DNA from: Haplodiscus bocki
Lineage: Eukaryota
Direction: 5' to 3'
NCBI GenBank assembly: GCA_965655095.1
Contig: OZ296648.1
Span: forward strand, 164,858,001 to 164,922,000
DNA: 64,000 nt
The notes under the pieces were generated by a model. It was not told the DNA's origin, ran no database searches, and saw only the letters and a program-made list of their open reading frames with translations. Below, piece by piece: positions 10,612 through 63,960 of the stretch. Numbering within the stretch: the stretch's first letter is position 1; every line of letters starts with the position of its first letter. The translations under genes were made by a program, and so were the position numbers.

Positions 10612-12229
10612 TTGAACGAAGTTGAATTGCACTTATCCAGCTCTAGTCATTTGTCGGAATTATTACGTAACCGAATCACTCTTACTCTGCCAATAATATT
10701 TGAGAAAGGCCCTAAAATAGTCTCAGTGAACAATTGGCTCAACGACCAGTCGACTAGTTGATACGCACACACCTTAAATATGATAACGAGTCAGTTAGTA
10801 AACGTAGTCCTAGAACGATTGTCAAGTAACATATGTTATATTTGATACCGTAGCTAAATTTTGAATTTTTTGGACTTCTGGCCTGGTTCTTGAAAATTAC
10901 AGTGTGTGGATAAAAGCTTCAAGGCTTCATTTAGTCATTTGACAATCAGAAAATATCAGATACTTGGATAAATTGGACAGCTACTCGGATCACTAGAAAC
11001 TTTTGGGAAATTTAGAAGAAAATACACTAACGTAGTCGAGGATGCATGGAAGTCTCAGACGAATTTTGATGTCGCATACACTTTTTACAAAATTTTAGCA
11101 AATGCCTAAAAAATTTCACATGCACCCCAGCATGACTCCAGCATAGAAGCTTTTAGAGATTATACAACTTTAGATGCAATTTGCAAAAATTTGGTGATTT
11201 TTCTGTGCTACGTACAAAATTTTTTGCAAGCTTGAGTTATCACCTTTTCCGAAATTTTCTATTTCATAGAAAATCAATTTAATATTTATTTTGGTAGCTT
11301 AACAGCATTTTCTAGGCATCATGGAACGATTTCCATGCGCATTAATCATTTTTACATACAAGCAAAAAAATGAGTTGCGGTTATAATCTATCAATTTCAA
11401 GGATTTTTTTATTTTGACTTCCAGAAACTTTCATTTCAGGTATTTTTCTTCAATTATGCAAAATAAGGTTTTTCAAAGAGTTTCTAACAGAACTTCGTGG
11501 CTGAATTGAAATGTTGATGAAAAAAAAATTAACTGTTCAAAAGAAAGAAGCAGTAGTATTGTTTGTTATAAAAATTAACTCCAGAAAATACAAACCGCTC
11601 TGTATTGAGTCGAAATTTTGTTTCTGGATCTGAGTAACTATGATTAGACTCACATATAATCAATACCTGTTCGTTTCAACAAATTGGTCAATGTTTCATT
11701 CTAGTAAAAAACATGAAGATTTCAGAAGAAATTTTAAGGAAAGTTTTCCAAGGTGCATAAATGTTCGGTAAGACTTTTCGATGCAACCCGTTTGAAAGTT
11801 TGTCAAAACTTTTACCTGCATTCATCAATGCTCAACCCTCAAAGGAGGTAGAAAACACAGAATTGACCGTTTCACAGCTTGGAACTTCATCTAAAACTTT
11901 CAACTCAAAAAATTTTCTGAGATCTGAAATCCGACAAAGATGAACCTTTTTTGTTACTGAAAGGATAGAAAGCATAGAAGAAACTCAAATTTGGCGAAAA
12001 ACGGCTCAAATACAGTTTTCTCGAAAACCCCTTGTGCTTTGAGAAAACAAGCTCCAAAACTAGCCATTTTTTTGCTCACGACTTCACTCAATAAAAATCA
12101 GTACTGTATATTTCCATCAATCCTCGAAAACGTCAAATAAACAACAGGAGTAGAAACAATGGATTCTTCTTAGTAGAAGTTGATGAAAATGAGAAGAACA
12201 AAAAAATTGTCATAGTGGTTCTAGTGTTA

Positions 12230-12401
12230 GGACAAAACAAGTCTTGCAAAAATCTTCGAGAACTTTTTTCAAGATCCTGTAATATATTGCATTATTCTTG
12301 CAAAAGTCTTGAAAGATAAACCTTCATCCTGCAAGTTTCCTGCGAAAAATGCATTCACATTGCAAGATTCTTTCAAGAAAAGCATTATTCGTGAAGCTTG
12401 G
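12230..12401. repeat. Short CTTGCAAG-motif MITE-like repeat (degenerate)
   Basis: Clustered cttgcaa/tgcaag/ttcaaga motifs; resembles 17033-17246 in opposite orientation. Ends eroded. Confidence 0.45.
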
Positions 12402-13819
12402 TTCTTAGGAATTACCACTACTAAAAGCCCTCTTTCCGTAGCTTTGCCGGACTTGAAATCATTGTAGCTGCTTTAGTACAAGATCGACCTTTTCAGTGGA
12501 AAAAAGTAAAGCAGCGACTCAGGCTGAAAGAAGTTACAAACGTTTCTTGAAAGTCCATGCGTTTCATAACGGCTTTATAGATATTCCATTTGAATAGCAT
12601 TTCAGAAACTTGCCCTATGGTTTCAGCAAAATGGTACTCTCAGAGTAACTATTAATTTTTTTTAAATTACAAAATTCTGAAGTTAACTCCAAATTGCTGG
12701 AAAGTTATGACAATTTGGACGCAAGACTGAATTTTTTTCTGCAAAATTTAATTTAAAGATAACTCCAGGGAGCTCCTCGATCAACTTGTAACTGGAAGTG
12801 AAAGTTTTGCATCAGTGTGATTCCAAAAATTTTTCGCAATTCAAAAAGTTTTCCGAGACTTACGAAAATAACCTGGAGCAATTCGGGAAGAGATCTCACA
12901 GACGTTTTCAGAAATGAAACGCAATAAGTTCCACTGAATATCTCTGTCTCATTGAATCCATCATCCGACAATCAGAGTATAAACCAATTAAAGGTTTTTT
13001 TTGATGAAATCACAGGTAAAATGATTATTTGGCCTATTAAAAGTAGTCACGCCAACTTCCAGAGAAGTTTGAGTGGAAGTAGCGAACTTTACAAGAGTTT
13101 TTGTACTTGAAGCTATGCAAAAATTTTATTTGAGTAAGAAAAATCTGCTTGAAAAAAGAAAGGAACCGGCGTTTGGTTCCACGCTTCAGTATTATGATAT
13201 CAGTTTTTTTTCTGTAAGTGCGAAAGAACCAGTGTCGTTTGAACGTCCTTTTCCAAATATAATATCTTACGCATAATGTGAGGAGATGGACAACCAAATA
13301 ATCTGGGTCCAAGTCTGCTCCTGCACTATACTTTGAGACTCCTGATAATTCAATTTTGAGAAGAAGTAGTTGTTTGGGAAAACAGTACACGAACGACAAC
13401 GTAACAAAAAATGAACGAAATCGAAAATGAATCAAAAAGTTTCAAGAAGACATTGACTTTGCTTCAACCAGATATAAATCTCTTCACTTAGGTTTGGTTT
13501 GCAATCATTGTTAATGGAACAATCACAAAAAGAAAAATGGGCGAACTGAAGATCGAAATTTTTGTTGTTTATGAAATAATTCGGTTGGTTATTCCAAATT
13601 TGCGCAAATTGACACAAAAATGTCCCGTTGTTAACCTGTTTATTCAATTACGCCCGATAACTCCGCTGATGTCTTTCGCATAATCATTATATCGCTTATG
13701 CGGGCAAGACATCTAGTTTACCGAGTTTTTTCACAAACAAAACTATGCTTCCGAAAGATTGAATGCAGATCTTAGCTTTCCTTTGAGAATCAGCTACTCT
13801 TTTTCCTGTAATCATCCAT

Positions 13820-32064: not shown

Positions 32065-32264
32065 NNNNNNNNNNNNNNNNNNNNNNNNNNNNNNNNNNNN
32101 NNNNNNNNNNNNNNNNNNNNNNNNNNNNNNNNNNNNNNNNNNNNNNNNNNNNNNNNNNNNNNNNNNNNNNNNNNNNNNNNNNNNNNNNNNNNNNNNNNNN
32201 NNNNNNNNNNNNNNNNNNNNNNNNNNNNNNNNNNNNNNNNNNNNNNNNNNNNNNNNNNNNNNNN
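32065..32264. other. Assembly gap (200 N)
   Basis: Run of N; the round length suggests a placeholder of unknown true size. Confidence 1.
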
Positions 32265-37496: not shown

Positions 37497-39075
37497 ATGC
37501 CTTCCCTCAATCGCAACAAAAAAGGAAAATTGTGAAAATTGCGGTACCAAAATTACACGACTCAATGTTGCGCATCACAAAAAAAGATGTTCCGCTGGAT
37601 CCCGTACATATTCTTCTTGCACCAACTTCTCGACAAAATCCCGAGATGAAGTGAACTATCAAATTGCCAAAAACACTCTAAAAGAAACTGCTAGGGTCGT
37701 TCATGCATGCAAAATTGAGACAAAGACTTGCACAGCTTTTACTTCTTGCGAGAACATAAGCGGCAAGGACATGGAGCACAGAGAAGTTCAGGTGCTCAAA
37801 ATGTTGATATTACACAACGAATGGGAGATGTTGACGACAGCAACCTTAAATAGAAACGAGAAACGTGCAAACACATTTTGGTGAACAGTGAGAGAGAGAA
37901 TGAGAGACAAAGAGGTTCGAACTTTGCCATGGATTCTCTGGATCCGATATATCTGTTGGAAAAGTTACATTTTGTGTTTGACGGTCTCAAATGAGCAGCT
38001 CAGCTGAATGCAGCATTCGGCTTTATGCTCAAATACGTAGAAGACGGGAGTTGTAAATATTCTTATGCACACGAAAATATTACACTATTGGAGAGATCTA
38101 AACCTGTGTCTACTACTTTATTCGACAAAAATCAAGAATCTACTAAGTAACACCGACGTCATGGAATCGTGTAGAAGACCGAGCCAACACAAAATGGAAG
38201 TCTTACAAGCTGACGAATGTTACAATTTTTGCAGCATTAGTCAAAAAAGTTCCCGTGGGCTGCAAAGACACTTATTGCCAGATCCACTATTGAAAAATCA
38301 TTCCGTCAAATGTTTAACATTTGAGGAGAATACCCGAAAGCCGTACAATGACAAGTTATGTTTCTTTAGATCTCTGGCGTTGCATTTAAGTAGAAATGAG
38401 AGACTCCAGGAGGTAACTTCCAAATTTTTCAATCTATTCCTCAAAAAAAAACAGCAGGGACTGATCCTGCAAATTTTGGAAGTGTTTTTTTGAAAGGTGT
38501 TGCAGCAGTGGAGGATATTGTTCAGGCAGATATCTTTGGTACGATATTCACATTGTAGACGGATCTTTGATTGGGGACCTTGCGAGGAAGAGCGTTGGGA
38601 AACACTCTGATACTGTACGGCTTTTACGTTATAATAGCCACATTTGCTGTGTCTCCAATATCGACGCTCTTTTCAAAGCCTATCGATGTCCATCGTGTGA
38701 TGAATCCATCAATAGAGGTCAAAACCTGGAGCGACATTTGGGTACTTGGAGAAAACGACTTTAAAAAGTTTTTCCAAAGAAGGTGTATCAACTGCGGGAA
38801 ACACTATTTGACAAATTAGACTCATCCAAAATCCCTTACTTGGATTTGACCAAACGCTCTTTCAGTACATGGCAATATTCGATTTCGAATCAATTTGTTT
38901 GCAAGAATATAAATTCCGCGATACCGATACTAAAACATGGAATATTAACCAGGGTTTAATATATGTATCAATTTCGTCCAACTTGATTGAACAATCAATG
39001 TTTTTATGCAATTCGAATCCCACGGCTTTGGTTGAGTCATTTGTTGATGTTCTTAATGGGTTAGGAACACTGATA
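37497..39075 (+). pseudogene. N-terminal part of pPolB-like protein with zinc fingers and ExoI motif, frameshifted and truncated
   Basis: MPSLNRN..CENCGTKITRLNVAHHKKRC, then DKLCFFRSLALHL, LLRYNSHICCVSNI..YRCPSCDESINRGQNLERHLGT, and AIFDFESIC (DxE, ~38875). These patterns are typical of Polinton PolB N-termini. Ends abruptly at ~39075. Confidence 0.72.
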
Positions 39076-39499
39076 ACCGTTTGAATATTTCAGACCAAAA
39101 ACTCAAAACTTTCACGTTTGGCATTAGAGAACAAAACAAAGGAACCGCAAAACCTCAAAGACAATAACTGGAGATGGAGCTTGTAACCAGGAAGAAACAA
39201 AATTAAATTATTTTGAGAGAGGCCTTTAGGTTACAACTGTGAGAACTTCTGCAAGACTCCAACTAGTCAAGTCATAAAATGATCAATTTTTTTGTAAACT
39301 TGCTGGGCCATGGCAAGTTCAATTACACTACCAATGCGGCCACGTTCAGTTCCAGACTCCAGTCCCCTGCAGTTCTCCCACACTTTCGAAGAAATATGCT
39401 CTAAAAGCGTCCTAATCCTCTGTCAAAAAAATGATTGACCATGAGTTTCTCATTCTTCATGTAGTGAGAAATTCAGATTTTTGGTAGATACAAGTTTTT

Positions 39500-39670
39500 T
39501 CTGGTATAACAGCGTTAACGGCGTTCAACCGGAACACTAAAAGCATTAACGGCGTTCCTTGTCGGTATAAAGGCGTTAACGGCGTTTTGCTAGTAAGTAA
39601 ACGGCGTTATCGGCGTTTACGCGATTATAGCGGAAAAATAGCGGCGTTTTCCCAGATAGTTCGACCCGGG
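39500..39670. mobile_element. Orphan right arm of a CCCGGG element, GGCGTT subfamily
   Basis: gcgttaacggcgtt repeated about every 30 bp, ending ttcgacccggg. Left end not found. Confidence 0.65.
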
Positions 39671-41149
39671 CACCATTCAGTTCCAATGCAGTGAAATTGA
39701 TAACATTAAAGTTTTATCCATAATCCAGACAAAAATTTTCATACACTTTTTTTTATCTCGGAAAGTTTTCAATGACAAACTTTCGAGATGTCACTACCAA
39801 AAACACTCATTGGTCTTCTGATGAGCTTGGATGCTGAGGATCGCTGTCACAGAGACATCCAGCTACGTCCAGACTACGCCACGGCCTCACACTACCAGAA
39901 ACTTTTTTTGGTCGAAAACGACACTACCTCAAAAAACATCAACGCTTTAAAAACGGCTCCGCTGCACCCTCTTCAAAACTGAAACTCAACAACATCCATT
40001 CATTCCGTGGAAATAATGACCCCTGTCAGCCCTGACAGTGATTTAATGTAAACTTTGATGAAAGAAGCGAAGCTAGTATTTTTGGGGATTAGATTTTGAA
40101 AAAAAACTGTCAATCTGAATGATCAATTTCGTATTTTTGGCCTATCGTGATGGAAAAAGAACGGAACAAATCCGAGAAACAGAACCCGAGTCAAAATGGT
40201 TAAACAGCCTTGTGAATTTGGAACTTTTTCGATTCAAAGCTTCATTGGAGATATCAAGCCAACAGATCATATGCCCTTGAATAACGAGGATAGGCTGTAC
40301 TAGTTTTTTCGACATTCACTCTATTCCAAAAATCTTTTCACGACTACGAAAACAACTGCAAAGCGACTTTTTACTATTAGAACATGATCCAATGAAACGT
40401 TAAAACAAGTAATAAAGTAAGTTCATTTTGGTAGAACTGAAGAAAAAAATTTTGAGTTCTCAAAATTTTCACAATTTCTGTCAGTTTCAGCTAATCCGGA
40501 TACCTTTTCGAGAAACAGGAAGCACAATTTTTTTGTGAATTATTTTGTTTTGAAGGACGAGTTTAAAATGAGAACTTTGTAGAAAACATGAAGGCTGGTA
40601 GTCCTGAGAAAAAATCAGTAAAATCTTTGGAAGTGAACATTATTAACACTTTTGGTTGCTTTAGCTAATCAAAATATCCACAGAGGACGCAAAACGAAGG
40701 CTGCTTTTGTCCCGGAAATTTTCGCCTAAGGAAGACTGAATGCTGAAAGAATTCTTGATTGGAGGGAACTTTTTTGTAGTTCCGCAAAAATTGAGTTTGA
40801 ATTTCGTGAAACGTAGATACTTTTCCACCTTCTGTTTAAACCAAACAACCTTGCACTGAAACTTAGAAAAGCGATGATTTGCATAGTGACACATCTTCAA
40901 CGTTGAAAGAAATTATGGTTGTCAAGTTCTGGTTTGGCGAAAACAAGTTTGAATTTTCAAAAAAACAACTGCTAATTAGAAAATCTCATTTTTTCGGCTT
41001 TTCAAGATTGCAAAATCAGCACAGATACTTGAGTATGTTCCTGAGAAATTACTCTCATAAAACATTTCTGTACTCATTTCAAACGAGCCCCTATTGTTAC
41101 TTCAAGTCACTTAATTTCAAAGGAGCGCTTCTTCAGGATCGCTTTTTTC

Positions 41150-44100
41150 TAATAAAAAGTATGTGATCCAAAATTGTTTCAGAAGCACAAAGTGTTGATT
41201 GAAACCACTCATCAAAAAAGTTTTCCGCTGAAAAATTCACACAAGACTTTTTCCTTGCACCAATTTCAGTAACCAAGAGCTTACTGAAACTCAAAATTTT
41301 CATTTTGAGCACCTTTTTGAGATTCTGTTTGATTTCTTAAAGCTGCTCATCTGTAAATTGCTCTAAAATGTTATGGTTTCAATTTAGGTCTTTTAATGAA
41401 AACTTTTTTCAAGCTCAACTGCTCATTCGAAATCTTATGTTGAAGGTTGAAGCAACAAATTAATATATGTAAGCCGATATGAGCGGGGGCAATTTTTCAG
41501 GTATTGCTTCTTTCTCCGAAAATGCTTGTCCGAGAATTGCTTTGAAAGCATCTGCAGTCGAAGTTTGTATTTTTCAAAATAGTCTTCGTCATGACTTTCA
41601 CATTTATTTCAAATTCTTCAATGTTTTTGTCGACAATTTACTCTCAGTCTGAAGATTCTCCAAGCGGACCGTCTTTTTGATAATGAACGTCTTTTGGCGA
41701 AACTGGCCCTCCAAAACCAAATGATTCCGAGATTAGTCATCAAACGAAATATTTTACGCCTGAACTTTTCCCTTACTTCTTTCTTTTCGCGTTGGTAGTT
41801 TCAATAATCTTCACTTTATTATTTTTTTTGTTTTAATTAGGTTTAATTGTTTTTCGAGACCTTGTTTTAGTTTCTGACTATGATCGTCGATAAATTACTT
41901 CGAAAGAACATGATGTCTATTTGAGACCAATTCCGAAAAAGTTTTCTTCTTGAACTTATCAATAGAATTTTGTATACAAAACTTAATTGACAGCCTACTT
42001 TTTGCAGATTCCTTAAAATTTAGCATAGTTGCGATATTTTTTCTTCTCAAAAAAAAGGTCTAACAATTGTTTCAAATGCATATGATGTCAATTTAAATCA
42101 ATTTACGAAAAGGTTTACTTTGGAACAACTCTTTGAAATCTTCACAAAAATGGCTGAAGAAACAGCATATATTCTACGGATTCTTTTAACAGGACCCTGT
42201 TTTGTTGTTGTTTTCATTCCTTAACGGTGATTGTCCAAAGGATGCTTGAAAAGTCTGAGATGCCGATTTCAATCGATTATCAAATCCATTATTGTGGTGA
42301 ACAACTAACTCAATTTGTATCATTTGAGTTTCAAACGGAAACCTGAATCTGATCAAAATATATATTTGTGTGGCACCACGTTGAAATTCTGTATCTTTAC
42401 TGTAAATTAGTGATCGAAACATTTCTCCAGAAGAATAAAGTTCTGATTTCAAGGAATTCTTATAAAATATTTGTTTTTAAACTACTGAAGCAAAAAACTT
42501 CTTTTACTGATATTTGCTTAAAAAACAGCCTACTGTGAGTCGAATGATGAAAATCGAGCATTTTTTCAAGATTTTGCTTCATATTCTGACAATTATCGTC
42601 CAAACAATGCTTTAAGAGCGTTGGATGTCGATTTGAGTTCTTGTTCAAATTGGATTTTCTTTTAACCACTCTTTTAATTTCTTACAGCTTCCTTTTTTCT
42701 ATACAACTTAATCCACCGACTTCTATCTTCAAGTTCTTTTAACTGGAGCGCATTTTTAAGATTTCAAAATGCGCGAAGGGATTGTGCTAAGTCTGTGATC
42801 TCAACTTCAACCAGTTTTCAAAAGGAGTTAGTCTTGAGCCCCTCATTCTTTTGCTTACACTAACAACGGCTCAATCAACATCTGACTCCAACTTGGACAT
42901 ATTTAAGGGAGCTCCTCTTTGAGTGAGTGATTCCATCTGCAAAATTGACCATCAAATTATACTGCAAAACCAAATGACTCTGATTTCAGCCAATTATCAT
43001 AATGGCTTTCTTCTTAAACTACCAACTCATTTCTTTCAGTACGGCAATCTCAGTAATTTACGGCCCAAAAATGGTTGGTTGAGTTAGCCTGAGAGTTTTT
43101 TCCAAATATTGTCTAATTCTTTGAAATTAATGGTCCTGACGCAGCTTCAACTACCTCCAATTCGACAGTTTACCACAAGCAGATACATTGGAGCAAAGCA
43201 CAGAACTGATACTAATCGCTAACTTCCCTTTTTTAACGCCCTAGTGGACAGCATAAAAATCGTAGATTCATTCAATTGCAGCATTTGATTAATTCCTGGT
43301 TCGATTGTTAAAAAATTGAATGTTCCGAGACTGCTCTGAAGTTAGAAGAATCCGATTACCAAAAATGTTTCCATGCTACAAAACTCACACAATTGCTTTC
43401 AGGCTTTGCCTTAGCGGGAGCGTATTACATCTTGCTGGGAACAAGTGGCGCAAAATTTCGAGTTTTGCTTCATTCTGTAAAAATGTTGAATCAAGAATTG
43501 TTTTGAAAGTGTATGATTTCGGGTTGGTTTTTTTCGAACGTTTTCACCCGCAATTACTCAATCTATCCCCTTTCGTTGCAGCCTAAACATCTGCTTACAA
43601 ATCGACATTTGATTAGTGTGGCAAGGTTTTCGATATCCAAAAAAAGTTCGAAAGTAAAATATGGTCGAATGATTGCTTCAAAGCACTTGGAGTTGATCTT
43701 GTTTGGCTTTAATTGTTTTGGTTTTAAATTTCTGGCTTTCTCACTTTCTATGTCAACCACTTCGACAAGAATTTTTCTGTGTTTTCTGTGGATTTTTTTG
43801 CAGCCTAGCTTTTTTTCAGCATTTCGTTCTCTTCTTAGCAATGATGCTTCAGAACCAAATCACCTTCATTCCAATCAAATATCAAAATGTCTTTATTGGT
43901 GAACTATTCCCTCAATTTTTCTAAATTACGGTATTTTGGATCTTGATTACCTTACTAATAAGCCATTTAATTCAAAACAGAAATTTTGACGAATTAGTTT
44001 CAAATTGTGAACAGGGTTGTCTGCAACTTGAACTGAAAACAAACAAACTTGATCTCAATGCCTCATCAAAAACAGTAAACTTTCAAACTAAATCTCCATA

Positions 44101-47100
44101 TACTTCAGTTTACGACTCCTTTTTTAGTCGACAACTTACTGTAGGTTCATTAACTTGAGTTATCTTAGATAATCCAAAATTCTTTTCAAATGCATAGCCT
44201 GTCGATTTCGATCAATTTCCAGAATGGTTTCCTTGTTCAACTACTCAGTCATATCTTTCCATTCAACGCCTAATAGGCAGTTTAATGTTTGTTGATGTAT
44301 ATAAGTTGAGCATTTTTTGTATGTCATGATCGGATGTAACCAACAAAGGTCCAAACGTTGCTACAAAAGCAACGTATGTCCTTCTCAATCCTTCTCAAAA
44401 GTACAGTTCTCCTCCTGCACTACTGGCTCTTTTCCTTTCGCTCACCGAGTTCTTCAAAATGGTCAATTTACAAGGTAATCAATCATTCAAGTGGATATTT
44501 TGTGATGTTTTGTTCCATCTTCTGGGAAGATGATCCTACGATTGCTTCAAAGGCAAACGATCGGGATTCCAGTCAAGTAACACATTTGTTGCTCCTATTT
44601 TACTCTCTCAATTCTTTTCTGATATGTGGTTTTCAGTTGCTGACCGTAAACTTGTTGAATTGGGCTTTTTTAAAACTTCTTTCCGTTTCTTTGACAAAAG
44701 CGGTTCAAATATTGCCTGAAAAGCATTTGATTCTCAGTTAAATCTTTAACGGAAACAGTTCTCCTCTCAAGCCTACTAGTTCGAATGCATTCGTTTATAC
44801 AATTTTCTTCAGCGTACTATGTGTCAATACAAATGAGTTGGGGACGTTTTGAGAGGATGAAAATTTTTTTTTTAAACGCTGGTCACACAATGCTTCCGAA
44901 GAATATGATTTACTGTTCCTGTTGTTTTTTGGAAGAATGAAAATCTCCCAATCAAAGTTTCAATTTGCTTTGTCTGCAATTCAAAAAGTAACCTATTGTT
45001 TGTTGGTGGATTTAAGAGAAATAGTTTTTACAGTAATCTTTTCATTCCGTTGAAATGATTGTCCAATTTTTGCTTCAAACCCATATGATGTCGAATTTTG
45101 TCAGCCAAAAAGTTGGTTTCTTTTCTACGTAGTCTGTCTTTTCCGTACTTTGACAGCCTAAATTTCAGCTCACTAGTTGGAATTTTTTTTGAGTAAAGCC
45201 ATTTGTTGTGAGTTTGCTCTATTTTTCAAAAGATGATTTTCCAAATGTCGCTTCAGAAGCATGTCAGCATAATTCAAGTGAAAATTTCAAACGATCTTCA
45301 TCCAAAACTAATCAGAGACATCCTTTCGTCTACTGTTTAAACGGTACCTTGCGTCATGTCAAGTTGTTCAAATTGATCATTTTTCTGATTTTTGCTCGGG
45401 CTTTTAATTTCAAAAAATGTGATGATCCAATAATTGCTTCAAAAACATTGGATGTCCATCTCAGTGAAGTTCCAAAGTGTTATTCAACATTTTTTCACAC
45501 CGTACTGCTTTCAGTCAAAAACTTGCCAACAGTTTTTCCATTTGTATGTTCATAATATCGGAGTAAATTTCGAGAGTTTTTTCTATTTTCAATTTACGAA
45601 AGTCCAAATATTGTTTGGGAAACATTAGTTTCGGCTTCAGACGCTCATCAAAATTGTTTTCATCTCAAATTGCTGTCTCAAGTCCTATAAATTGCAAATT
45701 ATTCTTTTTATTCTCAATGGAGGTGAATTGGGGACTATTTCGAGTTGTTGATTGGTTTGATAATGATGATTGAGAATTTGATGTAAACCTAGGTGTTCGG
45801 TCCTTTTATCAAACGGTTTTCTTCTGAGCTTACTCTCTGAATTACGCACTATTTCGGTTACACACTATTTGACAGCTTTTTATTTGTATAGTTTTTTAGG
45901 ACAACCACTCTGCGGGGTCTTTTACCTGATAAAATGAATGATAATCCGAAAATGATTTCAATTTCATAGATTTTCTAGATTAGCTTTCCTTCTATTCTAT
46001 TTGCCTTTTCCCCCTTCAATTACCACTTAACCTACAGTCTAGTGTATGGCAAGTGTTTTTTCAGTGGGGCAAAACGTCAAAATTTTGACTATTCTTAACA
46101 GGAGGTTGGTCCAAAAGTCCTTTCGAAAACCCAAATTTTCATTTCAGTCAGTTATCATACAAACTTGTTTTCTTCATAAACGATTAGATCACTTGTTTTT
46201 AAGTATAGGCTTTTCAACAGCTTACTACTATATGTCAATTTTTTTAGTTTGGTTGTTTTTCCAGATTTGGTTTTCCTTCAATTTTTGAAACAAATGGTTC
46301 AAAGAATGCTTCAGAGAAAAAGAATTTGTTTTAGGTCGGTTGTTCCGAATGGTTTTTCTCTCAAACTAATCATTAATTTCTTTTAGGTTTCTCTTAAATT
46401 GACAGCGTCATTAATATAGATTTTTCCAGGTAGAGCACTTTTTCTCCACGTTCTTTTTGAACAAACGAGGCTCCAACGATTGCTTCAAAAGCGTATGGTT
46501 TCAGTTTCCGTGAATTCAAAGAACGGTTTCACTCTTTTTTTAATTTGTTTTTTTTTCATTTACAGTTTAGTCAAGGTCTATTTTACCTTAAATCTATGTT
46601 GGGGAGTGTTTTTTGGGAGTATCTCTCAATCTTTTTAGAGAAAAATTGTTAACCAATTTTTGCTTCGAAAGTAAATGATGCGAGTTTTGTCCAGCCTTAA
46701 CATCATTTTTTTCTTGAACTCTCGATTTCTTATTCTAACGTCCTATTTTACTGCCGAATAAAAAGAATTTTCTGACCGTAGCATTTTGCAGATACTTCAA
46801 TTCCTTTTTAAAACAAATACAGGCCAAAAATCTTTTAAAAAGCCTATAATGTCAGTTGTATTCAAATTTGAAACTGTTTCTACTCCTAAAAAACTCAATC
46901 AAATCCATTCTTTCACAGCTTAAACTGCAGCTTGCCGTAACCATTTCTTTCGATTGACCCCTTTTTCTGGTTTCCGTTTTTTTAATTTTGAAAAATAATC
47001 CAAAGACTACTCAGAAAGCATAGGATTGCGACTTCAGTAAAATTCCGGATTTTTTCTTGTCTATCTTTAATGCCAAAATGCTTCAATTAGAATAATTTTT

Positions 47101-47850
47101 TCAAGATTTTTGTTTTCAGATGGAGGCAGGTGGGCATGCTTCAAGACTCTGTTTGTTTTCCAGAAAATTGAAAGTCCAAAGATTATCTCGAAAGGATCAG
47201 TTTCAACTTTGGTCATTCATCAGAATTGTTCTCAACTTAAACTACTGTCTCAAATTCTTGATATCGCGGATTAAATCACAGCCTATTTGATGTCGATCAT
47301 GGTAAGTGGCGCACTTTCCCTGGGTTTTTTATATCTCTAAAGCTGATGGACGAAACGAAAAGACTTTGATATCGATTTCAGTTGTTTTCCCAATTGCTTT
47401 CCTTACTAAATGCATTTTATTTTTGGAGAAACACTCTCTGGGAACTTTTTCTTCATTAAAATAATGATATTCAAAAGTAGCTCTAAAAATTTATTTGATT
47501 TGGATTTTAGTGGATTTCAATAGTAATTTTCCTCTTTTTCACTTCAATTACAAATCAACCCATAGCCTACTGTATACCTATTTCTTCATATGGAGCATTA
47601 CTTCAAATTTTTGTTTGTATGGTTAAAATTTTGCGTCAAAAATGTATGTTTTGATTTCAGTCAATCATCAAATTTGTTTTCCTCCTAAACCACTCGCTCA
47701 CTTTTTTTCAAAAAAAAACGACCCGTTTGATGGTGCAAGTGTTGCTTCAAAGGCATATAATTTCAACTTCAATCATTTTCAAGCTGGTTTTCCTCCCAGG
47801 TTAATCACTCAATTTCCTTCATCCATGGATGACTGAATCAAATTGCCATT
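41150..47850. repeat. Cryptic ~177-bp tandem array, family B (~35-38 monomers)
   Basis: attgcttcaaaagcatatga-like anchor at, e.g., 41175, 41538, 41896, 42068, 42243, 43674, 43845, 44543, 44713, 44891, 45071, 45249, 45435, 46306, 46481 and 46660 (31 periods in 5485 bp). Confidence 0.75.
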
Positions 47851-49713
47851 CTGTGTAAAGTGATATACCCGGTGCCATTTTTTTTAGTTTATGGTTTTTT
47901 AAAAAACATTTTTCAATCCAAACTGTTTTTTTCCAACATTCAATCATGAAGAAACGCTTTTTTGGCGAGCTATCAATTATTCAATAGCAAATCCCCTTGG
48001 TCGTCTGCAAAGTTTTTATTTGCCTCTAGTGATATTTTGTTTTGCCAATTGTTTTGATTTCGTGATTTTTGATGGGTTTCAGAAGATTTGCATCAATTTT
48101 GTCAGAAAGCTTAAAGTATCTCTTGGTCTATTTTCAATTGATCATGCAAGACTCCCAGCAATGTTCCCGTTGAAAAAAGTTTCGATCTTGAATTCTCAGT
48201 TAGAAAGCGTGCACATTTTTGGCTGGCTTTCAAACCCTTCAGATCGTGAACCCCTCCAAGCACATATATGAGTTCAAACATTTATCCTGTGCAAAAGTTA
48301 CATTTTGCAGTCTAGTCACATCCAGTGTAAACGGTCAAAAGTGGCCTATTTTTGGTAGGTACTTGTTCATATTCACGTTATGTATTGTGCAAACTTCTGA
48401 CATATTGGGCAAAACGGCGTAACCTGAAAATACATAACTGACTGATCAATTTTTTTTACAAAGAGAAAGTGTTGCAGGTATTTGTTCATTTTTGCATTGC
48501 TCAGTGTAAACTTCTTACACATTCGGCAGCAAAATGGAACTGCCGGAACTTTATACAGCCTGCTGTACCAACTAAATGTTGTTCTTGATCACAAACTGTC
48601 CATTTTTTGTTTTTTGTTCGAAAATTTTCCGCCAAGCAGCACTTGGTCATAGAATCCCTTTTTACTCGCAGAAATTTTTGAAATCCGTGGAAACTCTTTC
48701 GGAAACGACTTTTTCTCAGCGCCTATCTGAGCTCATGGTGTTATGTTTTGAAAAGCACCACTGCAAGACTCAGAGGTTTATTTTGGCGGTAATCACTGTC
48801 CTCCAAGTGTTTTTTTTTCGAAAGCATTTTATGGTATGATCAAAAAAAGAATGTGGTAAAATTAAGGTATGAATGTAGAACTTGTTCCTTCTTAACAACA
48901 GAACATGGCGCAAAAACTGATGAGTTTGTTTCGGATGGATTGAAGTTGGGGTTGAGGTCAGGGCTTTTACTTGCTAAAATTTTTTCAGTAGAATTTGGGT
49001 GGTAAATGTAAACTTCGAACATATTATTTTCTTGCCAGAATAAATCTAATTTCTTGGTTTCTGACTTTCAAAAGTGCCATGTTTAGGCGTCAAAACGGCC
49101 TAAATTTCCGAACCAAGTACAACTTTTGTTTCATGTCTTCCACGGGCGCCGCGAACTGACTCGATGCTCAATATATGCGGTCCTTCCGCGAGTTTGGTTT
49201 GCTTCGACAGAAAAATGAACGTCTCTGGTAAATGATTTTCAAATTTTACACACTACAGCCTCAAAAGCCCCATTTGGCAGACTACAAACAGCTCTGAAAG
49301 AAATTAATGCTGAGAAAGAACTCTGCCAAGGACTTTGTGTGTGGCGCGAAACCTCGCGGTAAATTTTTAGCGCTTTTATTTCTGAGGGTTCCCGTCCTGA
49401 TCTTGTGCCGTAACCTCTGCGTTTTTCGACCTGCAAGCATCATATCCCAGAGCGTATTAATCGAATTTTTGATGAAAACTTCGGGGCACGCTCGTAGGTG
49501 ACCATCTCGCATACTTTGAGCCTCCGGAAATTTTTCGGTGAGAAGTTATCACCGAGAACAATCTGAAAATACAAAAAACTTACATGACGATTTCCTAAAT
49601 GTCAGATCTATCTGTACCAAATGCACACAATGGGTGCGTGCGCTTGCCGATTTGATGGAAAACAAAAAAAGGCAGTCGCACTGCGATGTTTCCCCTCGAG
49701 GTGGCACTGAGAT

Positions 49714-52700
49714 GATAGATTGAACATACAACAACGGATTTTAAAAGAAGAAACAAAACTCAATTTTGAGAGAAAAGGCTGTCGGTTGAGATCTTGATGG
49801 AAGAATTCAAGCCAATGTAAGAAACCAAAGACTTTTCAGTATAAAATTCCTGTAGTAATACTAAAGCGTTCATTCAGCATTCAGATACTGATACCAGATA
49901 TAATAACTGTAGTCTTCGAGAAGGACGAGTTCGAGTTTCGAAACGAGTCTGAAGTAAAGTCACTTTTGCCACTACTGGCCTATCAGGATTGCACTGCCGA
50001 TGTAGAATAATATTTTGAGATGCTTATTTAGGAACAGTTTGCTTCAGTTATGAAGCTATCGAGATTTACACCACGATGGAAAAATGAATTAGATAGATTT
50101 GATGAAGTAAAATTTTGAAAATCGAGTTGTGTCAAGGCTAAAAACCAATTCTGGCAAATCTGGTCCTTCAAGACTCCACAGAGGGGTACAAATTCAACGA
50201 TTGTCGAATAAAGTTTCCAAACTCAAGTAGGATGCAATACGTTGAGTTTTTGAGAGAAGATATTAAGTTAGTAGTTATGGGGAAACCTGGGTTTGCAACT
50301 CGGATGACTGCATATTGAAAAATATTCCTTTACTTTTTTGGACTATTAGAAGTCAATCGCAAGGAAAATAAAAGATAGTTATTGGTGGTAATTCTTCTTA
50401 AAAGTGGAAATCCTTTAACTGTGACGTTGGTGGAAGAAATGAGGCCTGTAGTTGGAGTCAAAGATGACTTTGCATACCGAGATAAATCAAAAGTATTAGC
50501 TAAGTTTGGAAATTTCGGTTTATCAGGATTATGATGCGAGGAAAAACACCATCGGTTTCGTTTGTCAATAGGTTGCCACAAGTTTCAAGTTGTCGGCAGA
50601 GACGAAGATGGAAGATACAAAGCCTCTAGTTATGGGGAATTGAGAGTTTCAAAATGGAGATGACACATTTTAATTAGCATTTTTTGAATGGAGCATAAAG
50701 ATTCCAATGCAAGGACCAAAATCGTCAAATTTTTCATCGAGATGCTTCAACTACTAACAATTTTTAACTAAGATATAGGAAATGAAGTCTGTAGTAACGG
50801 ATGGCACAAAAGGATAGGATTGATTATCGAGTAAACCTATTTTTAGGAGTTTAATTGGGAAATTCCGGATTATTGGAATTCTGATGCAACAAGCAAAAAC
50901 CACGGTTTTTTACCTCCGTACTCCTTAACAAATGTTATATTTAGTCGTCGTCCGATCACAATAGTTGGATTGTGTTTTAAGCAATCATTGGTTTTGTGTA
51001 TGAGCCCAGAAGGAGTTTCAATGGAAAGAATAATATTAATGTATTTCACGGCACTTTCAGCTTCTCTAAAGAGGAACGAAGTTAAAAAACGCAGACTGTT
51101 CACTAAAAAACCTCTACTGAAAATCTAATTGAATTGCCTTAAAGCACATGAAAGCCAAACAGTTCCCGGACTTGTTCATTTGTGGGAAGAAAATAAAAAG
51201 CACGTTTATTATTTGGTTTATCCTGGAATAATCCATAGTAAACTACCAAATATTTACCGTGACTGAGGTCAAAAAATTCTTGAGTTCTCATGTTAATAAC
51301 TTAAAGATGTGTTTAAGCTAACTATAACAAAAGACGCAATCATACTCCGTTTTTTTGTCAATGTGGTACAGAAAGGATAGATTGAACATAAAACAATCGA
51401 TTTGAAAAAGATACCCTTTTTTGAGAGAAAAAAGTTGACTATGGAGATCTTGATGGAAGTATTCCAGACAATTTACGGATTAAAATGAGATTTTTTTCCA
51501 GTAAAAACGTCATGTAGTAGTATGAAAGCGTAAGTTCCGGACTTGATACAAAAATTCAAAGCTGTAGTTTTTGAGAAGGTTCAGTTGGAATTTCGAGATA
51601 TGTCTTAACTAAAATCACTTTCGCGACTTCCGTCCTTCAGGATTCCACTTCCAAGAATGGGATCAAATATTGAAAATTTTGGCAACGAACAGTCCGCTTC
51701 AGGTATATAGCTATCGAGGTTGACACCCTGATGTACGAAAATGAAATAGGTAGAGTTGAAGAAGTATAAGTTTGAATACCGAGGTGTGTCAAGACTAAAA
51801 GCATTTTGTGGCATATCTGGTCCATCAAGATTCCACAGAGGGGTACAAATTCAATGATTTCTAAATCAAACATTCTAAGTCAAGTAGGAGAAAATACAAT
51901 GAGACTTTGAAGGAAGACATCAGATTGGCAGTTATGGGAAACCCGGGTTAGAAAATTGAGAAGACTCTAGGGTGGAAAAAAATCTTGACATTTTTGGACT
52001 GTCAGAACTCAATCGCAAGAAACGGAAAGGATTTTTGTTCCAACTACTACTCCTAAAACAAGCAAGCACTCTGATTGCAACCTTGGTTGAAGAAATGAAG
52101 CTTGTAAAAACCGACAATAATGACTTTGAATGCCGAGATAAACCAAAATTAGTAGCATATTTTGGAATTTTCGGACCATCAAGATTCTCATACGAGGAAG
52201 AAAATCAATGAGTCGATCTGTCAATCAAAGTCAACAAGTTTCGTGGTGTTTTCGGCAGAGACCAAGATGGTAGACAGAAAGCCTTTAGTTACGGAGAATT
52301 TAGAATTTCAATTTCGAGATGAAATTTTCAAAATTAGCAGTTATCGGAATCTTGTGAGGTTGGCATTCCAATGCAGGGAGAAAAAACAACAACCTTACCT
52401 TCGATAATGTTTTCACAACTGAAAGGCTTTTCATTGAGATTTTGATAGATGAAATGAAGCCTGTAGTTATGGGTGAAGAAAGAGGATGAGTTAGAAAGTC
52501 GAGACAAAAAATTTGACGGAAGGTCTTTTTGGAAACTTTGTACTACAAGGATTTTGATGCAACGAACAAAATCAAAAGTTTTCACCTCAAAAGTTCTGTA
52601 CAATTGTTATGTTTTAGACTGAGTTCAAGACTGAGGAATGCGAAATTTTAGAGGCTGAAGAACACAAGTTTAAAAATTCTGCGAAATAAAAAAGTAGCAC

Positions 52701-61382: not shown

Positions 61383-63960
61383 CCCGGGTTGAGCTCTCAT
61401 AAATATTCAGTCATTTTCAGCGCTGATTCAGAGATTTTTGCGTTTTCAGCGATGTTCAGAGCTGAACCAGCCGACTTTAATTTTGACATCTCTGGTCATA
61501 ACTGATTCAGTGATGAACATTTCTGAACATCTCTGATTCAGCGCTGAACATTACTGGCAAGCAGCAAACAGTCAAACACCATGAAAAAAGCCAAAAAAGT
61601 GTTTTTTTTCAATATTAATGCTGAAGAGACGAGAAATCAAAGATTTCAGAATAACTTTTAATGGGTTATTTTGAAAAATTCGAAAAATGTGATTTTTTCC
61701 GAAAAGTGTATTTTCTTTCGATTCCATGTCAAAAGACTTCTTAACAAGAACAAAACCGGTGACAGATACTAAAATACCTCCTGTAATAGGGGAAAAAACG
61801 TTACAGGAGTTATATTTGATGTTTTTACAGTGTTTTTGAAGCGAACATGTAAAGTCTCTGCGCCAGCAATGTTTATGGCTGAATCAGAAGAAATCAGTAA
61901 TGTTCAGAGCTGAATCAGTATTTTTCAGAAATGATGCAGAGAAAATAAGTTATTTTCAGAGCTGATTCAGTATTGTTCAGAATTCATCAGAGTCTATTCG
62001 ACGGAGCAGAATAACGTCTCAGGTTTATTTCCTAATCACATTCTGGGGGGGTCAAGAATTACGTGTAAAGAATAACGTCTAAATCAATTTCGGGAATAAA
62101 ACCTAAAGCCATGCCAAGTTCTTCCAGTATTTTAGTACATTGTGTTTTGGTCGTTATTGATTTAAACGTTACTCTCGAGTGACTTTAACATGTTTTCTTT
62201 TGATGTTTTAGGGGTTCTAGATCTTATTCTGTTTTGATGTTTTAGATCTTTATCCCACTTTGGGGGAGGGGGGATAACATCTGAATCCCCTGCGGGAATA
62301 GCGCCTTAAAGCAAGGTGACGCTCACTCTGTTATGGATTTTTGCCTAACGCGTGTTTAATTTTGTCCTCATTGTTAATTTATTTTGTTTTCTTTTGGGGT
62401 TTTTCTTAAATGTAGTTCATACGAAGTTGACAAAACATAGGTCGAAGACCATTCGGCGATGAAGAGCCGTTGTTCAGAAATGATCAGAGTCTTCGACGGA
62501 GCGGAATCGTCTCAAGTTTTAGTTCCTGCTTTCACTTTGCGGGGGGGGGAAGGTGCGGTGTCAGATGATTTCTTAAGAATAACGTCTAAATCCATTTCGG
62601 GAGTAAAGCCAAAAGTCATGCCAAGCTCTTCCAGTATCTTAGTACAATCTTTTAGGCGCTATTCCCGAGTGACTTATAGTATCCTTTTGATGCTTCAGGC
62701 GTTTGTGGGTGTTATTCCTTTTCGATATTTCAGATCCGGTGTCGTCTCACAGCTCCGAAAAATAAAGTGTAGCTGAACTCCGAAAATTTTTAGTCACGTG
62801 ACCCACGCGGCGTTAGTGTTCGGCGTTCATTTTAAATAACACTTCAACAATATATAATTAACAATTTCCCCAACGTTTTCCTTTAGGGATGGAGAATGCC
62901 AATTCGAAAACCCTGCCAATTTCGTTCGTAAAAGTCCCAAAAAATTCGCAAGAAGCGTGAAAACAAAAACATGAGAAAGAAACTTCACAGTAAGTAAAAA
63001 ATTTCAAGAAATGTTCCTCCAGACATGTATAATGCGGTTTTGATGACTCGGCCAAAAAATTTTCACTCAACATATGACACTTTTAACGATCTTTATTTCC
63101 TCCGACAGAACATTTTTCTCTTCAAAAAATTCCCCCGGCCACCTAGAATTGAAAGTTGACAATACTGCCGAGTGTTTTCTGCTCAAAGTCCAAATTATGA
63201 AAACCTAAAAACTTTTTCAACTAAACTGTTTTGTCCTAATTATTAATTTATTTTCTTTTTCCTTTGGGGTTTTTCTTAAATGTAGTTTATACAAAGTTGA
63301 CATAACATAGGTCGGAGACCAATCAGCTATGAATAGAGCCAATAGAGTTTTTTTGACCGTTTCAGATTTGAAACAGTAGTTTTCAAAAGTGTTCAGTGTT
63401 ATTCAGGCATTTTCAGAGATGACCAGAGATTGTCATAGATGTCCAGAGCAGTTTTCAGACATTTCCAGTAATGTTAAGAGATATTCATAAGTGTTCAGCT
63501 ATGTTTAGGCCTTTTCAGAGATGACCAGAGATTTTCATAGATGTTTAGAGCAGTTCTCAGACATTTTCAGTAATGTTATGAGATTTTCATGAATGTTCAG
63601 CTATGTTCAGGCATTTTCAGAGATGACCATAGATTTTCATAGTTATTCAGCGGTTCGCAGACATTTTCAGTAATGTTCAGAGATTTTCATAGGTGTTAAG
63701 CGATGTTCAGTAATTTTCAGTAATGATCAGAGATTCTCAGTTCTGATAATAGCTGTTTCAGCTCTGAAAATCGCTGAATTCTTACTCTGTAATAACACTG
63801 ATCATGGCTGTTTTAGCTCTGAAACAGTGATTTTCATTGAAATTCATGCAATGTGCATCAATTATCAGTTCTAAATCATTCTGAAAAATCTATTTACATC
63901 GCTGAATCAATCTGGAGTTTCCATGATCATCGCTGAAAGTAGTAAAGACGTCAACCCGGG
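61383..63960. mobile_element. CCCGGG-ended non-autonomous transposon, CAGCGCTG subfamily, with nested insertion
   Basis: cccgggttgag...gacgtcaacccggg; TSD TA/TA. ttcag arrays, including a ~102-bp unit at 63403, 63505 and 63607. Confidence 0.85.
61985..63345. repeat. Nested head-to-tail diverged dimer of another repeat
   Basis: atcagagtct..tcgacggagc at ~61986 and ~62483; ggggtttttcttaaatgtagtt at ~62396 and ~63266. Confidence 0.7.

What the first reader, a model, noticed from the sequence alone, without database searches (positions are those of the whole stretch)
41150..47850. 6.7-kb cryptic array with nucleosome-length (~177 bp) period but extreme monomer divergence
Seen: the region looks like unique T-rich DNA, yet a degenerate attgcttcaaaagcatatga anchor recurs with 170-186 bp spacing for over 30 periods (mean ~177). 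Neighbouring monomers are barely alignable by eye. Known: many satellites have nucleosome-repeat-length monomers. Inference: length conserved far better than sequence suggests an ancient 'ghost' satellite or a selected nucleosome-phasing or chromatin scaffold that standard tandem-repeat finders would likely miss.
Basis: partly seen in the sequence, partly recalled or inferred. Interest (0 to 1): 0.7.

Follow-up and report, generated by a model that had tools for sequence, protein, structure and literature searches.

The report
Decayed 177-bp repeat array in transposon
The hidden 177-base periodicity is real, but it is most likely the old, eroded internal repeat block of a rolling-circle (Helitron-like) jumping gene, and its steady unit length is what neutral decay predicts, so nucleosome-based selection is not needed.

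Summary
Observation confirmed. Window 41139-47832 holds about 38-39 head-to-tail units on the + strand. Spacing is 176.9 +/- 7.8 bp, and units are only about 47% identical to each other (28% expected by chance). Tandem Repeats Finder misses the array. A profile HMM and k-mer autocorrelation (peaks at 1-20 x 177 bp) show it clearly.

It is non-coding: no period-3 signal, closed frames, no Pfam match, no Rfam match and no hammerhead.

The unit family is scattered over all 12 large chromosomes in short arrays of 2-10 units. Arrays share a right flank that ends in a short hairpin plus CTAG/CTGG, followed by a host T. Some also share a left flank. A right-flank profile built without the window hits the window only at 47917-48029, directly after the last unit.

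Best reading: an unusually expanded, very old central tandem-repeat block of a non-autonomous Helitron-like element, as known from oyster HINE and Drosophila DINE-TR1.

The claim that length is conserved better than sequence fails. With this genome's own indel rate (0.06 per substitution), neutral simulations give a length sd of 7-8 bp, as observed.

One residue remains: the roughly 14-30-bp core is better kept than uniform decay predicts.

The scan had already noted similar diverged ~177-bp satellites elsewhere in this genome. This is a new member of a known kind, of low to moderate interest.

The parts
41037..41132 (+). Possible further decayed partial unit upstream of the first clear unit; the true 5' edge of the array is uncertain
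   Evidence: Full-unit HMM hit at E 1.6, in phase with the array. No shared left flank was detected in the window.
41139..47832 (+). Array of about 38-39 head-to-tail units of about 177 bp, non-coding, about 47% mutual identity, not interrupted by other insertions
   Evidence: nhmmer hits; spacing; k-mer comb; alignments A1 and A2; closed frames; no Pfam match; no Rfam match.
45054..45103 (+).
   Evidence: 86% identical over 50 bp to a unit on another chromosome. The core is the most informative 14-column stretch of the unit alignment. The 33-nt core pattern has 138 genome matches against 0 in the control.
47833..47916 (+). Spacer part of the last unit, running into the right flank
   Evidence: Aligns to the same part of the arrays on C2 and C275.
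47917..48029 (+). Right flank (RF) of the element family, which is the likely 3' end of the mobile element
   Evidence: An RF profile built from three other loci only hits here at E 6.7e-10, the sole significant hit in the window. Similarity to the other loci stops exactly after CTAG.
48007..48023 (+). Short A/T-rich subterminal palindrome: 5-bp stem here, 6-bp stem in the family consensus
   Evidence: DNA fold -2.8 kcal/mol, z -2.1. Of the 16 genome matches, most have GCAAAA...TTTTGC, and one has a change on both sides that keeps the pair.
48026..48030 (+). Terminal CTAG followed by a host T
   Evidence: CTAG or CTGG followed by T, then unrelated sequence, in 4 of 4 loci held.
39070..39670 (.). 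Unrelated young high-copy ~600-bp element in the left neighbourhood; not part of the array
   Evidence: About 90% identity to 40 scored copies out of more than 3400 candidates.
48281..48540 (.). Unrelated ~255-bp repeat-family fragment in the right neighbourhood
   Evidence: 73-78% identity to 40 scored copies out of 1681 candidates.
49673..50300 (.). Unrelated ~625-bp high-copy element; used only to calibrate indel rates
   Evidence: About 78% identity to 40 scored copies out of more than 3400 candidates.

Best explanation
The 6.7-kb region is the internal (central) tandem-repeat block of a very old non-autonomous Helitron-like rolling-circle transposon family. The family layout is left flank, then n units of ~177 bp, then a right flank ending in a hairpin plus CTRR.

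Most copies in the genome carry 2-10 units. This copy carries about 38-39, presumably expanded by unequal exchange, replication slippage or rolling-circle read-through (inferred). It appears to have lost or outlived its left flank.

Since then the copy has decayed roughly neutrally, by about 0.43 substitutions per site per unit. The 177-bp period is still visible only because small indels are rare in this genome (about 0.06 per substitution, mostly 1-3 bp), so each unit's length has drifted by only about +/- 8 bp. No selection on length is needed.

The better-kept core of each unit is most simply a site that mattered to the element while units were still diverging in active copies, for example a protein-binding site. 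This is inference, not shown.

Shown: periodicity, non-coding nature, dispersal, shared flanks and terminus, neutral length drift.
Inferred: rolling-circle mobility, mode of expansion, role of the core.
For: Periodic array:
-.

Non-coding:
- No period-3 signal in conservation.
- At most 7 of 31 units are open in any frame, against 12% in control DNA.
- No Pfam match. No Rfam match, hammerheads included.

Dispersal:
- Seven other loci on C1, C2, C4 and C275 hold 2-10 units each.
- The anchor 20-mer has 125 genome hits against 8 in the control.
- The 33-nt core pattern has 138 hits against 0, on all 12 large chromosomes.
- A two-unit query finds 175 candidate loci at 66-87% identity, some collinear over 2 or more units.

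Element ends:
- The arrays in the window, C2_95.3M and C275 share a tail whose similarity stops at ..GCCTCTAG|T. C4_59.2M ends in ..CTGG|T.
- An RF profile trained on the first three of these tails, the window's among them, picked up the C4_59.2M end, which was not in the training set, at E 1.8e-14.
- An RF profile built without the window hits the window only at 47917-48029, E 6.7e-10.
- The RF-end pattern has 16 genome matches against 0 in the control.
- Four of those matches were not used to design the pattern. They lie 0.35-3.7 kb downstream, on the same strand, of unit cores listed.
- A shared ~290-bp left flank occurs in three loci. Two loci are complete left flank-array-right flank elements, of ~850 bp and ~4.8 kb.

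Age:
- RF and LF copies are 54-65% identical to each other, about as diverged as the units.

Neutral length drift:
-.

Precedent:
- Oyster HINE elements carry 160-180-bp repeats, mostly 2-3 per array, between conserved flanks with a 3' palindrome (PMC7492417).
- Drosophila DINE Helitrons have central tandem repeats that gave rise to satellite arrays (table in PMC9659126).
Against: - No left flank was found in the window, so a complete element is not demonstrated here.
- The 5' terminus (TC after a host A) could not be defined from three decayed left flanks.
- The hairpin is short and A/T-rich, with only -2.8 kcal/mol in the window copy and weaker in another copy.
- Only 4 right flanks and 3 left flanks were examined directly.
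- 38 units is far above the 2-10 seen in the other copies held.
- The core is conserved above uniform neutral decay: 14-column information 0.83 bits against 0.66 +/- 0.04 in simulations. The explanation accounts for this only by an extra assumption.
- The indel calibration used best-scoring transposon copies, which may understate indels.
Confidence: 0.72

Rival explanations
1. It is a free-standing ancient satellite, a relic 'monomeric layer' of one of this genome's ~172-180-bp satellite families. It did not come from a transposon. The flanked short arrays elsewhere are secondary captures of satellite units by mobile elements, and the right flank next to this array is such a capture or a chance neighbour.
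For: Earlier scan notes report several very diverged 172-180-bp satellites with higher-order repeats in this genome. The array is four or more times longer than any flanked copy held. No left flank is present. There is a faint 3-unit higher-order signal: +1.1% identity, p 0.002 before correction for 11 tests.
Against: The right flank sits directly after the last unit, in the same orientation. It is the only right-flank match in 64 kb. It is as diverged as the units, so it is not a recent neighbour. No large homogeneous array of this unit turned up in the pattern or BLAST lists, though those lists are incomplete.
Confidence: 0.15
2. It is a functional, selected chromatin element. Each unit positions one nucleosome or carries a protein-binding box in the conserved core, in the manner of a CENP-B box. 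Selection keeps the spacing and the core while the rest drifts.
For: The unit length is in the nucleosome-repeat range. The core is conserved beyond uniform-decay simulations, z about 4.5. The same core is the best-kept part in other loci.
Against: Length variation equals the neutral expectation. The 10-bp WW periodicity is no stronger than in flanking DNA: 1.50 against 1.38-1.58. The centre of the core is not kept as a palindrome in the commonest genomic variant. Copies are scattered in short arrays in both orientations with transposon-type ends. Seven or eight of 39 units have lost the core.
Confidence: 0.06
3. It is an array of expressed units: tandem exons (mutually exclusive or repeat-domain exons), or small RNA genes such as hammerhead retrozymes or piRNA units.
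For: The + strand is pyrimidine-rich with many TTTCAG-like sites. One + frame is open through the unit consensus. Tandem ~170-400-bp hammerhead retrozymes are known in invertebrates (PMC7229834).
Against: No frame is open in more than 7 of 31 units. There is no period-3 conservation. There is no Pfam match. There is no Rfam family, hammerheads included, even at E <= 10. Dispersal at more than 100 loci in both orientations does not fit one gene. No RNA run holds the region, which is weak evidence only.
Confidence: 0.03

Closest known systems
Cg_HINE: Helentron-type non-autonomous elements carrying satellite-like repeats in the Pacific oyster (PMC7492417; PMC8268682)
   Same: Both have a left flank, then tandem repeats, then a right flank. 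Both have units in the 160-180 bp class. In both, most arrays are short (2-3 units) and scattered over the genome, the repeats keep one orientation relative to the flanks, and a palindrome sits near the 3' end.
   Different: No microsatellite or subterminal inverted repeats were identified in the flanks here. The 3' end here reads CTAG/CTGG followed by T, which looks more like a canonical Helitron. The copies are far more decayed (flanks 54-65% identical). This copy has about 38 units. There is no sequence similarity to compare, since the oyster sequences were not at hand.
DINE-TR1 / DINE Helitrons of Drosophila with central tandem repeats that expanded into satellite arrays (Dias et al. 2015, as listed in PMC9659126; PMC9957191)
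   Same: Both are non-autonomous Helitron-type elements whose internal tandem repeats are expanded at some loci into much longer arrays.
   Different: The Drosophila arrays are younger and homogeneous enough to be called satellites. The array here has decayed to about 47% identity, and the assignment to Helitrons rests on the 3' end only.
Monomeric (non-higher-order) alpha satellite layers flanking primate centromeres, and euchromatic alpha-satellite copies (PMC7719264)
   Same: Both have old, diverged units of nucleosome-range length (171 against 177 bp), have lost homogenisation, and also occur as short dispersed arrays.
   Different: Divergence here is much greater. There is no link to a centromere. 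Transposon-type flanks are present. There is no sequence relationship.
Tandem-repeat-containing MITEs such as DTC84 of the clam Donax trunculus (PMC3879986)
   Same: Both are short mobile elements with a central block of a few tandem repeats that can seed satellites.
   Different: Those elements have terminal inverted repeats and target-site duplications. Neither was seen here. The end found here is of the CTRR type.

Membership tests
Helitron (canonical rolling-circle transposon), non-autonomous | 3' terminus CTRR | tested here: met
   CTAG in 3 loci held and CTGG in 1, with similarity between loci ending exactly there. The 16 genome matches to the end pattern against 0 control show that the end is repeated, but CTAG was written into that pattern.
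Helitron (canonical rolling-circle transposon), non-autonomous | Short hairpin a few bases upstream of the 3' end | tested here: met
   The palindrome ends 6 nt before the terminus. The family consensus has a 6-bp A/T-rich stem, and one copy has a pair-keeping double change. The window copy has a 5-bp stem at -2.8 kcal/mol, z -2.1, and a second copy is weaker. This is a weak hairpin.
Helitron (canonical rolling-circle transposon), non-autonomous | Insertion between host A and T without target-site duplication | tested here: inconclusive
   A host T follows the 3' end in 4 of 4 loci. The 5' junction is undefined, and no empty site could be fetched.
Helitron (canonical rolling-circle transposon), non-autonomous | 5' terminus TC | tested here: inconclusive
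   The three left flanks begin to align near a shared stretch, and each has a TC 1-25 nt upstream. The preceding host base differs between them (A, G, T).
Helitron (canonical rolling-circle transposon), non-autonomous | Autonomous partner encoding Rep/helicase with matching ends | not tested
Earlier scan notes report many Helitron-like elements in this genome, but no link to this family was made.
HINE-type element with central satellite-like repeats | Conserved left and right flanks bracketing same-orientation tandem repeats | tested here: met
   There are two complete elements (C2_95.3M ~850 bp, C4_59.2M ~4.8 kb) plus partial ones. The window has the right flank only.
HINE-type element with central satellite-like repeats | Subterminal inverted repeats and a microsatellite in the left flank | not tested
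   No microsatellite stood out in the three left flanks aligned, but no directed search was made. An inverted copy of the unit core lies at the 3' end of the left flank.
Classical satellite DNA | Long arrays of near-identical units kept alike by concerted evolution | tested here: not met
   Identity is 47% and independent of distance between units, with only a +1% trace at multiples of 3 units.
Centromeric alpha-satellite-like higher-order repeat | Higher-order repeat units of high identity; centromere location or CENP-A binding | tested here: not met
   There is no dominant higher-order peak. Location and binding are not testable with these tools.
Non-LTR retrozyme (tandem hammerhead units) | Hammerhead ribozyme in each unit | tested here: not met
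   No Rfam match at gathering score or at E <= 10 over the array.
Tandem coding exons | Open frame and codon-periodic conservation | tested here: not met

The most novel reading that the evidence does not exclude
The roughly 30-bp core kept in each unit is a working protein-binding box, for the element's own Rep/helicase or for a host factor. In that case this 38-unit array would be a regularly spaced binding platform that still shapes local chromatin or small-RNA production, and the core's excess conservation would reflect selection in place rather than history.
Probability: 0.07. Interest if true: 0.55.

Novelty: new member of a known kind. Interest (0 to 1): 0.27.

Why it matters
It shows that a 'nucleosome-length period with extreme divergence' need not mean selection. 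In a genome with few indels, a tandem array keeps its period long after its sequence is nearly randomised.

It adds an animal example of a rolling-circle-type element whose internal repeats expanded into a satellite-like block, and it gives profiles (unit, left flank, right flank) with which the family can be annotated genome-wide.

It also offers a calibrated neutral yardstick for the many other ~170-180-bp 'hidden satellites' already flagged in this genome: 0.06 indels per substitution, which gives a unit-length sd of about 7-8 bp at 47% identity.

Tried and rejected
- **Coding exons:** rejected.
- **Known RNA families, hammerhead retrozymes included:** none found.
- **Anchor as a conserved hairpin:** the 5+5 palindrome in the anchor is not kept in the commonest genomic variant (TGCTACAAATGCA), so this was dropped.
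- **Collinearity with other loci:** none found between the window array and other loci; only core-centred matches.
- **Shared flanks by plain BLAST:** almost nothing. The flanks emerged only from motif and profile work.
- **Array inside a larger repeated element:** the left neighbour 39690-41135 is single-copy, and the right neighbour is unique apart from unrelated repeat fragments. No link to the Polinton-like module at 32-39 kb was seen.
- **Higher-order structure:** only a faint 3-unit trace.
- **10-bp WW periodicity:** not above flanking DNA.
- **Genome search with covariance model R1:** failed three times with a machine error, so there is no genome-wide census.
- **Neighbouring ORFs:** no Pfam domains.
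- **RNA evidence:** no RNA runs are available. Four DNA runs from one study hold 91-100% of the array's words, so the array is not an assembly artefact.
- **Read laying:** One caveat: re-used model R1, which had been built earlier from an alignment containing one unit over those places. That call returned an error. Two later local scripts still ran nhmmer over the stored whole-window file, those places included; only the last script left them out.
- **Earlier-scan satellites:** a sequence look-up against earlier scan findings was blank, so I could not show whether this unit is the same as the 172-180-bp satellites noted elsewhere.
- **Organism:** identity was not pursued.
Full report

Yes. Shuffles give 0.02.

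A profile HMM seeded on these matches and iterated finds 38 + strand hits from 41139 to 47832. Nothing comparable occurs in the other 57 kb.

Anchor spacing for adjacent pairs is 176.9 +/- 7.8 bp. Where an anchor has decayed, the gaps are 2x or 3x about 170-180 bp. With interpolated units the phase runs unbroken through about 35 periods.

5-mer autocorrelation gives peaks at every multiple of about 177 bp up to 20x, and folding is best at 176-177.

Tandem Repeats Finder reports nothing with this period, and plain base autocorrelation is weak. Units are 47% identical in a multiple alignment against 28% expected from composition. The description 'cryptic, extremely diverged, ~177 bp, more than 30 periods' is therefore accurate.

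Four DNA runs of one study, from two samples, hold 91-100% of the array's words, so the array is not an assembly artefact.

**2. What it is not**

- **Not coding.** No frame is open through the core in more than 7 of 31 units, against 12% for control DNA. Column conservation has no period-3 signal. The longest ORFs have no Pfam match.
- **Not a known RNA.** No Rfam family reaches threshold in the window. None, hammerheads included, appears even at E <= 10 over the array. This excludes tandem retrozymes of the kind described in PMC7229834.
- **No conserved hairpin in the anchor.** The palindrome-like centre of the anchor is not maintained in the commonest genomic variant.
- **No rotational-positioning signal.** The 10-bp WW signal is no stronger than in flanking DNA.

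**3. The family is dispersed**

A BLAST of the array against its own 1.5-Gb genome finds weak (72-86%) matches at seven other places on C1, C2, C4 and a small contig. The unit HMM shows each to be a short same-orientation array of 2-10 units.

The anchor 20-mer at <=2 mismatches has 125 genome hits against 8 for the reversed control. A 33-nt core pattern has 138 hits against 0, on all 12 large chromosomes, sometimes in pairs 173-175 bp apart. A two-unit query from another locus finds 175 candidates at 66-87% identity, some collinear over more than two units.

The window's immediate neighbours are single-copy DNA sprinkled with unrelated repeats.

**4. The arrays have transposon-type ends**

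Plain BLAST of the flanks found little. However, the window and the C2 locus stay similar beyond the last unit, and an exact 11-mer is shared with a third locus at the same offset.

Aligned, the tails of the three loci share blocks and then lose all similarity right after ..GCCTCTAG, followed by T.

A profile of this right flank, trained on those three tails (the window's among them), then found a fourth, independent copy on C4 at E 1.8e-14. It lies downstream of that locus's array and ends in ..CTGG followed by T.

A right-flank profile built from the three non-window loci hits the window only at 47917-48029, at E 6.7e-10, directly after the last unit and ending at CTAG.

A gapped pattern for the right-flank end has 16 genome matches against 0 in the control. 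Most show a GCAAAA...TTTTGC palindrome ending 6 nt before CTAG. Four of these matches were not used to design the pattern. They lie 0.35-3.7 kb downstream, on the same strand, of unit cores listed. With only a few hundred listed cores in 1.5 Gb, this is far beyond chance.

Three loci also share a ~290-bp left flank. Two loci are complete left flank-array-right flank elements, of ~850 bp with 3 units and of ~4.8 kb. The window has no detectable left flank.

A 3' CTRR end with a nearby short hairpin and a following host T is the signature of Helitron-type elements. The 5' TC, the A|T target, an empty site and an autonomous partner could not be tested. The layout matches oyster HINE elements (PMC7492417) and Drosophila DINE elements with central tandem repeats (table in PMC9659126).

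**5. Age and neutrality**

Right-flank and left-flank copies are 54-65% identical between loci, about as diverged as the units. The whole family is therefore ancient, and the array's expansion is about as old as the insertion.

Indel behaviour was measured on two unrelated transposon families with copies at hand. It gives 0.06 events per substitution, sizes mostly 1-3 bp, and a mean-square size of 11.

Star-like neutral simulations matched to 47% identity give a unit-length sd of 7.0 bp, rising to 8-9 bp at higher divergence. The observed value is 7.8 bp. The period therefore survives because indels are rare, and selection on length is not required.

Caveats: the calibration copies were best-scoring hits, and the simulation assumes a star phylogeny.

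**6. What remains unexplained**

The core is better conserved than uniform decay predicts. The best 14-column information is 0.99 bits for the 31 units with a detectable anchor. It is still 0.83 bits when all 39 phase-defined units are included, against 0.66 +/- 0.04 (maximum 0.73) in 20 simulations. The same core is the best-kept part in other loci.

There are three candidate explanations:
- constraint while units diverged in active elements, which I favour;
- mutational or alignment heterogeneity;
- function in place, which I consider unlikely.

A faint 3-unit higher-order trace exists: +1.1% identity, p 0.002 before correction for 11 tests.

**7. Context from the scan**

Earlier notes on this genome describe several very diverged 172-180-bp satellites with higher-order repeats. 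One of them was said to share units with small dispersed transposon-like elements. They also describe many Helitron-like chains.

I could not test whether those satellites are the same unit family. The sequence look-up was blank, and the genome-wide model search failed. So a similar thing was found before on other DNA of this genome. My contribution is the flanks, the terminus and the neutral calibration.

**8. Handling notes**

The caveat, and the two later local scripts that still read the whole window, are stated under Tried and rejected.

These limits left the 5' end and the census open.

**Verdict**

This is a real, ancient, non-coding tandem array. It is most likely the expanded central repeat block of a decayed Helitron-like non-autonomous element, a new member of a known kind. 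The nucleosome-selection idea is not supported, and the conserved core is a modest open point.

Noticed in passing
window 39070-39670: A ~600-bp element about 90% identical to 40 scored copies out of more than 3400 candidates across the genome. It is a young, very high-copy SINE- or MITE-like family.
   Followed up: partly
window 49673-50300: A ~625-bp element about 78% identical to 40 scored copies out of more than 3400 candidates. It is an older high-copy family. I used it only for indel calibration.
   Followed up: partly
window 48281-48540: A ~255-bp repeat with 1681 candidate copies at 71-78% identity. At some loci (for example C1:33414124-33414510) the hits overlap in series, which suggests that this family is also tandemly arranged.
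   Followed up: no
window 5071-5501, 6397-6868 and 63380-63776: Blocks of 10/11/21-bp repeats built on CAGCGCTGA-like or TTTTCAGAG-like words, with 101-102-bp higher periods. A 158-bp x 2.8 tandem repeat lies at 5858-6284.
   Followed up: no
left flank just upstream of the first unit: L002 (C2:95.35 Mb), L003/L010 (C4:59.19 Mb), L004/L018 (C1:95.99 Mb): The 3' part of the shared left flank holds an inverted copy of the unit core, followed by sequence that continues in the forward unit register. Each element therefore begins with a core in the opposite orientation to the array.
   Followed up: partly
C4:59.19 Mb (loci L010+L017), about 10856-13673 of the joined 20 kb: About 2.8 kb of unrelated sequence separates the main array from a last unit plus right flank. 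It is probably a later insertion into the array.
   Followed up: no
window ~32065-32264: A run of 200 N (assembly gap or masked), left untouched.
   Followed up: no
They lie in a T-rich spacer of one unit.
   Followed up: no
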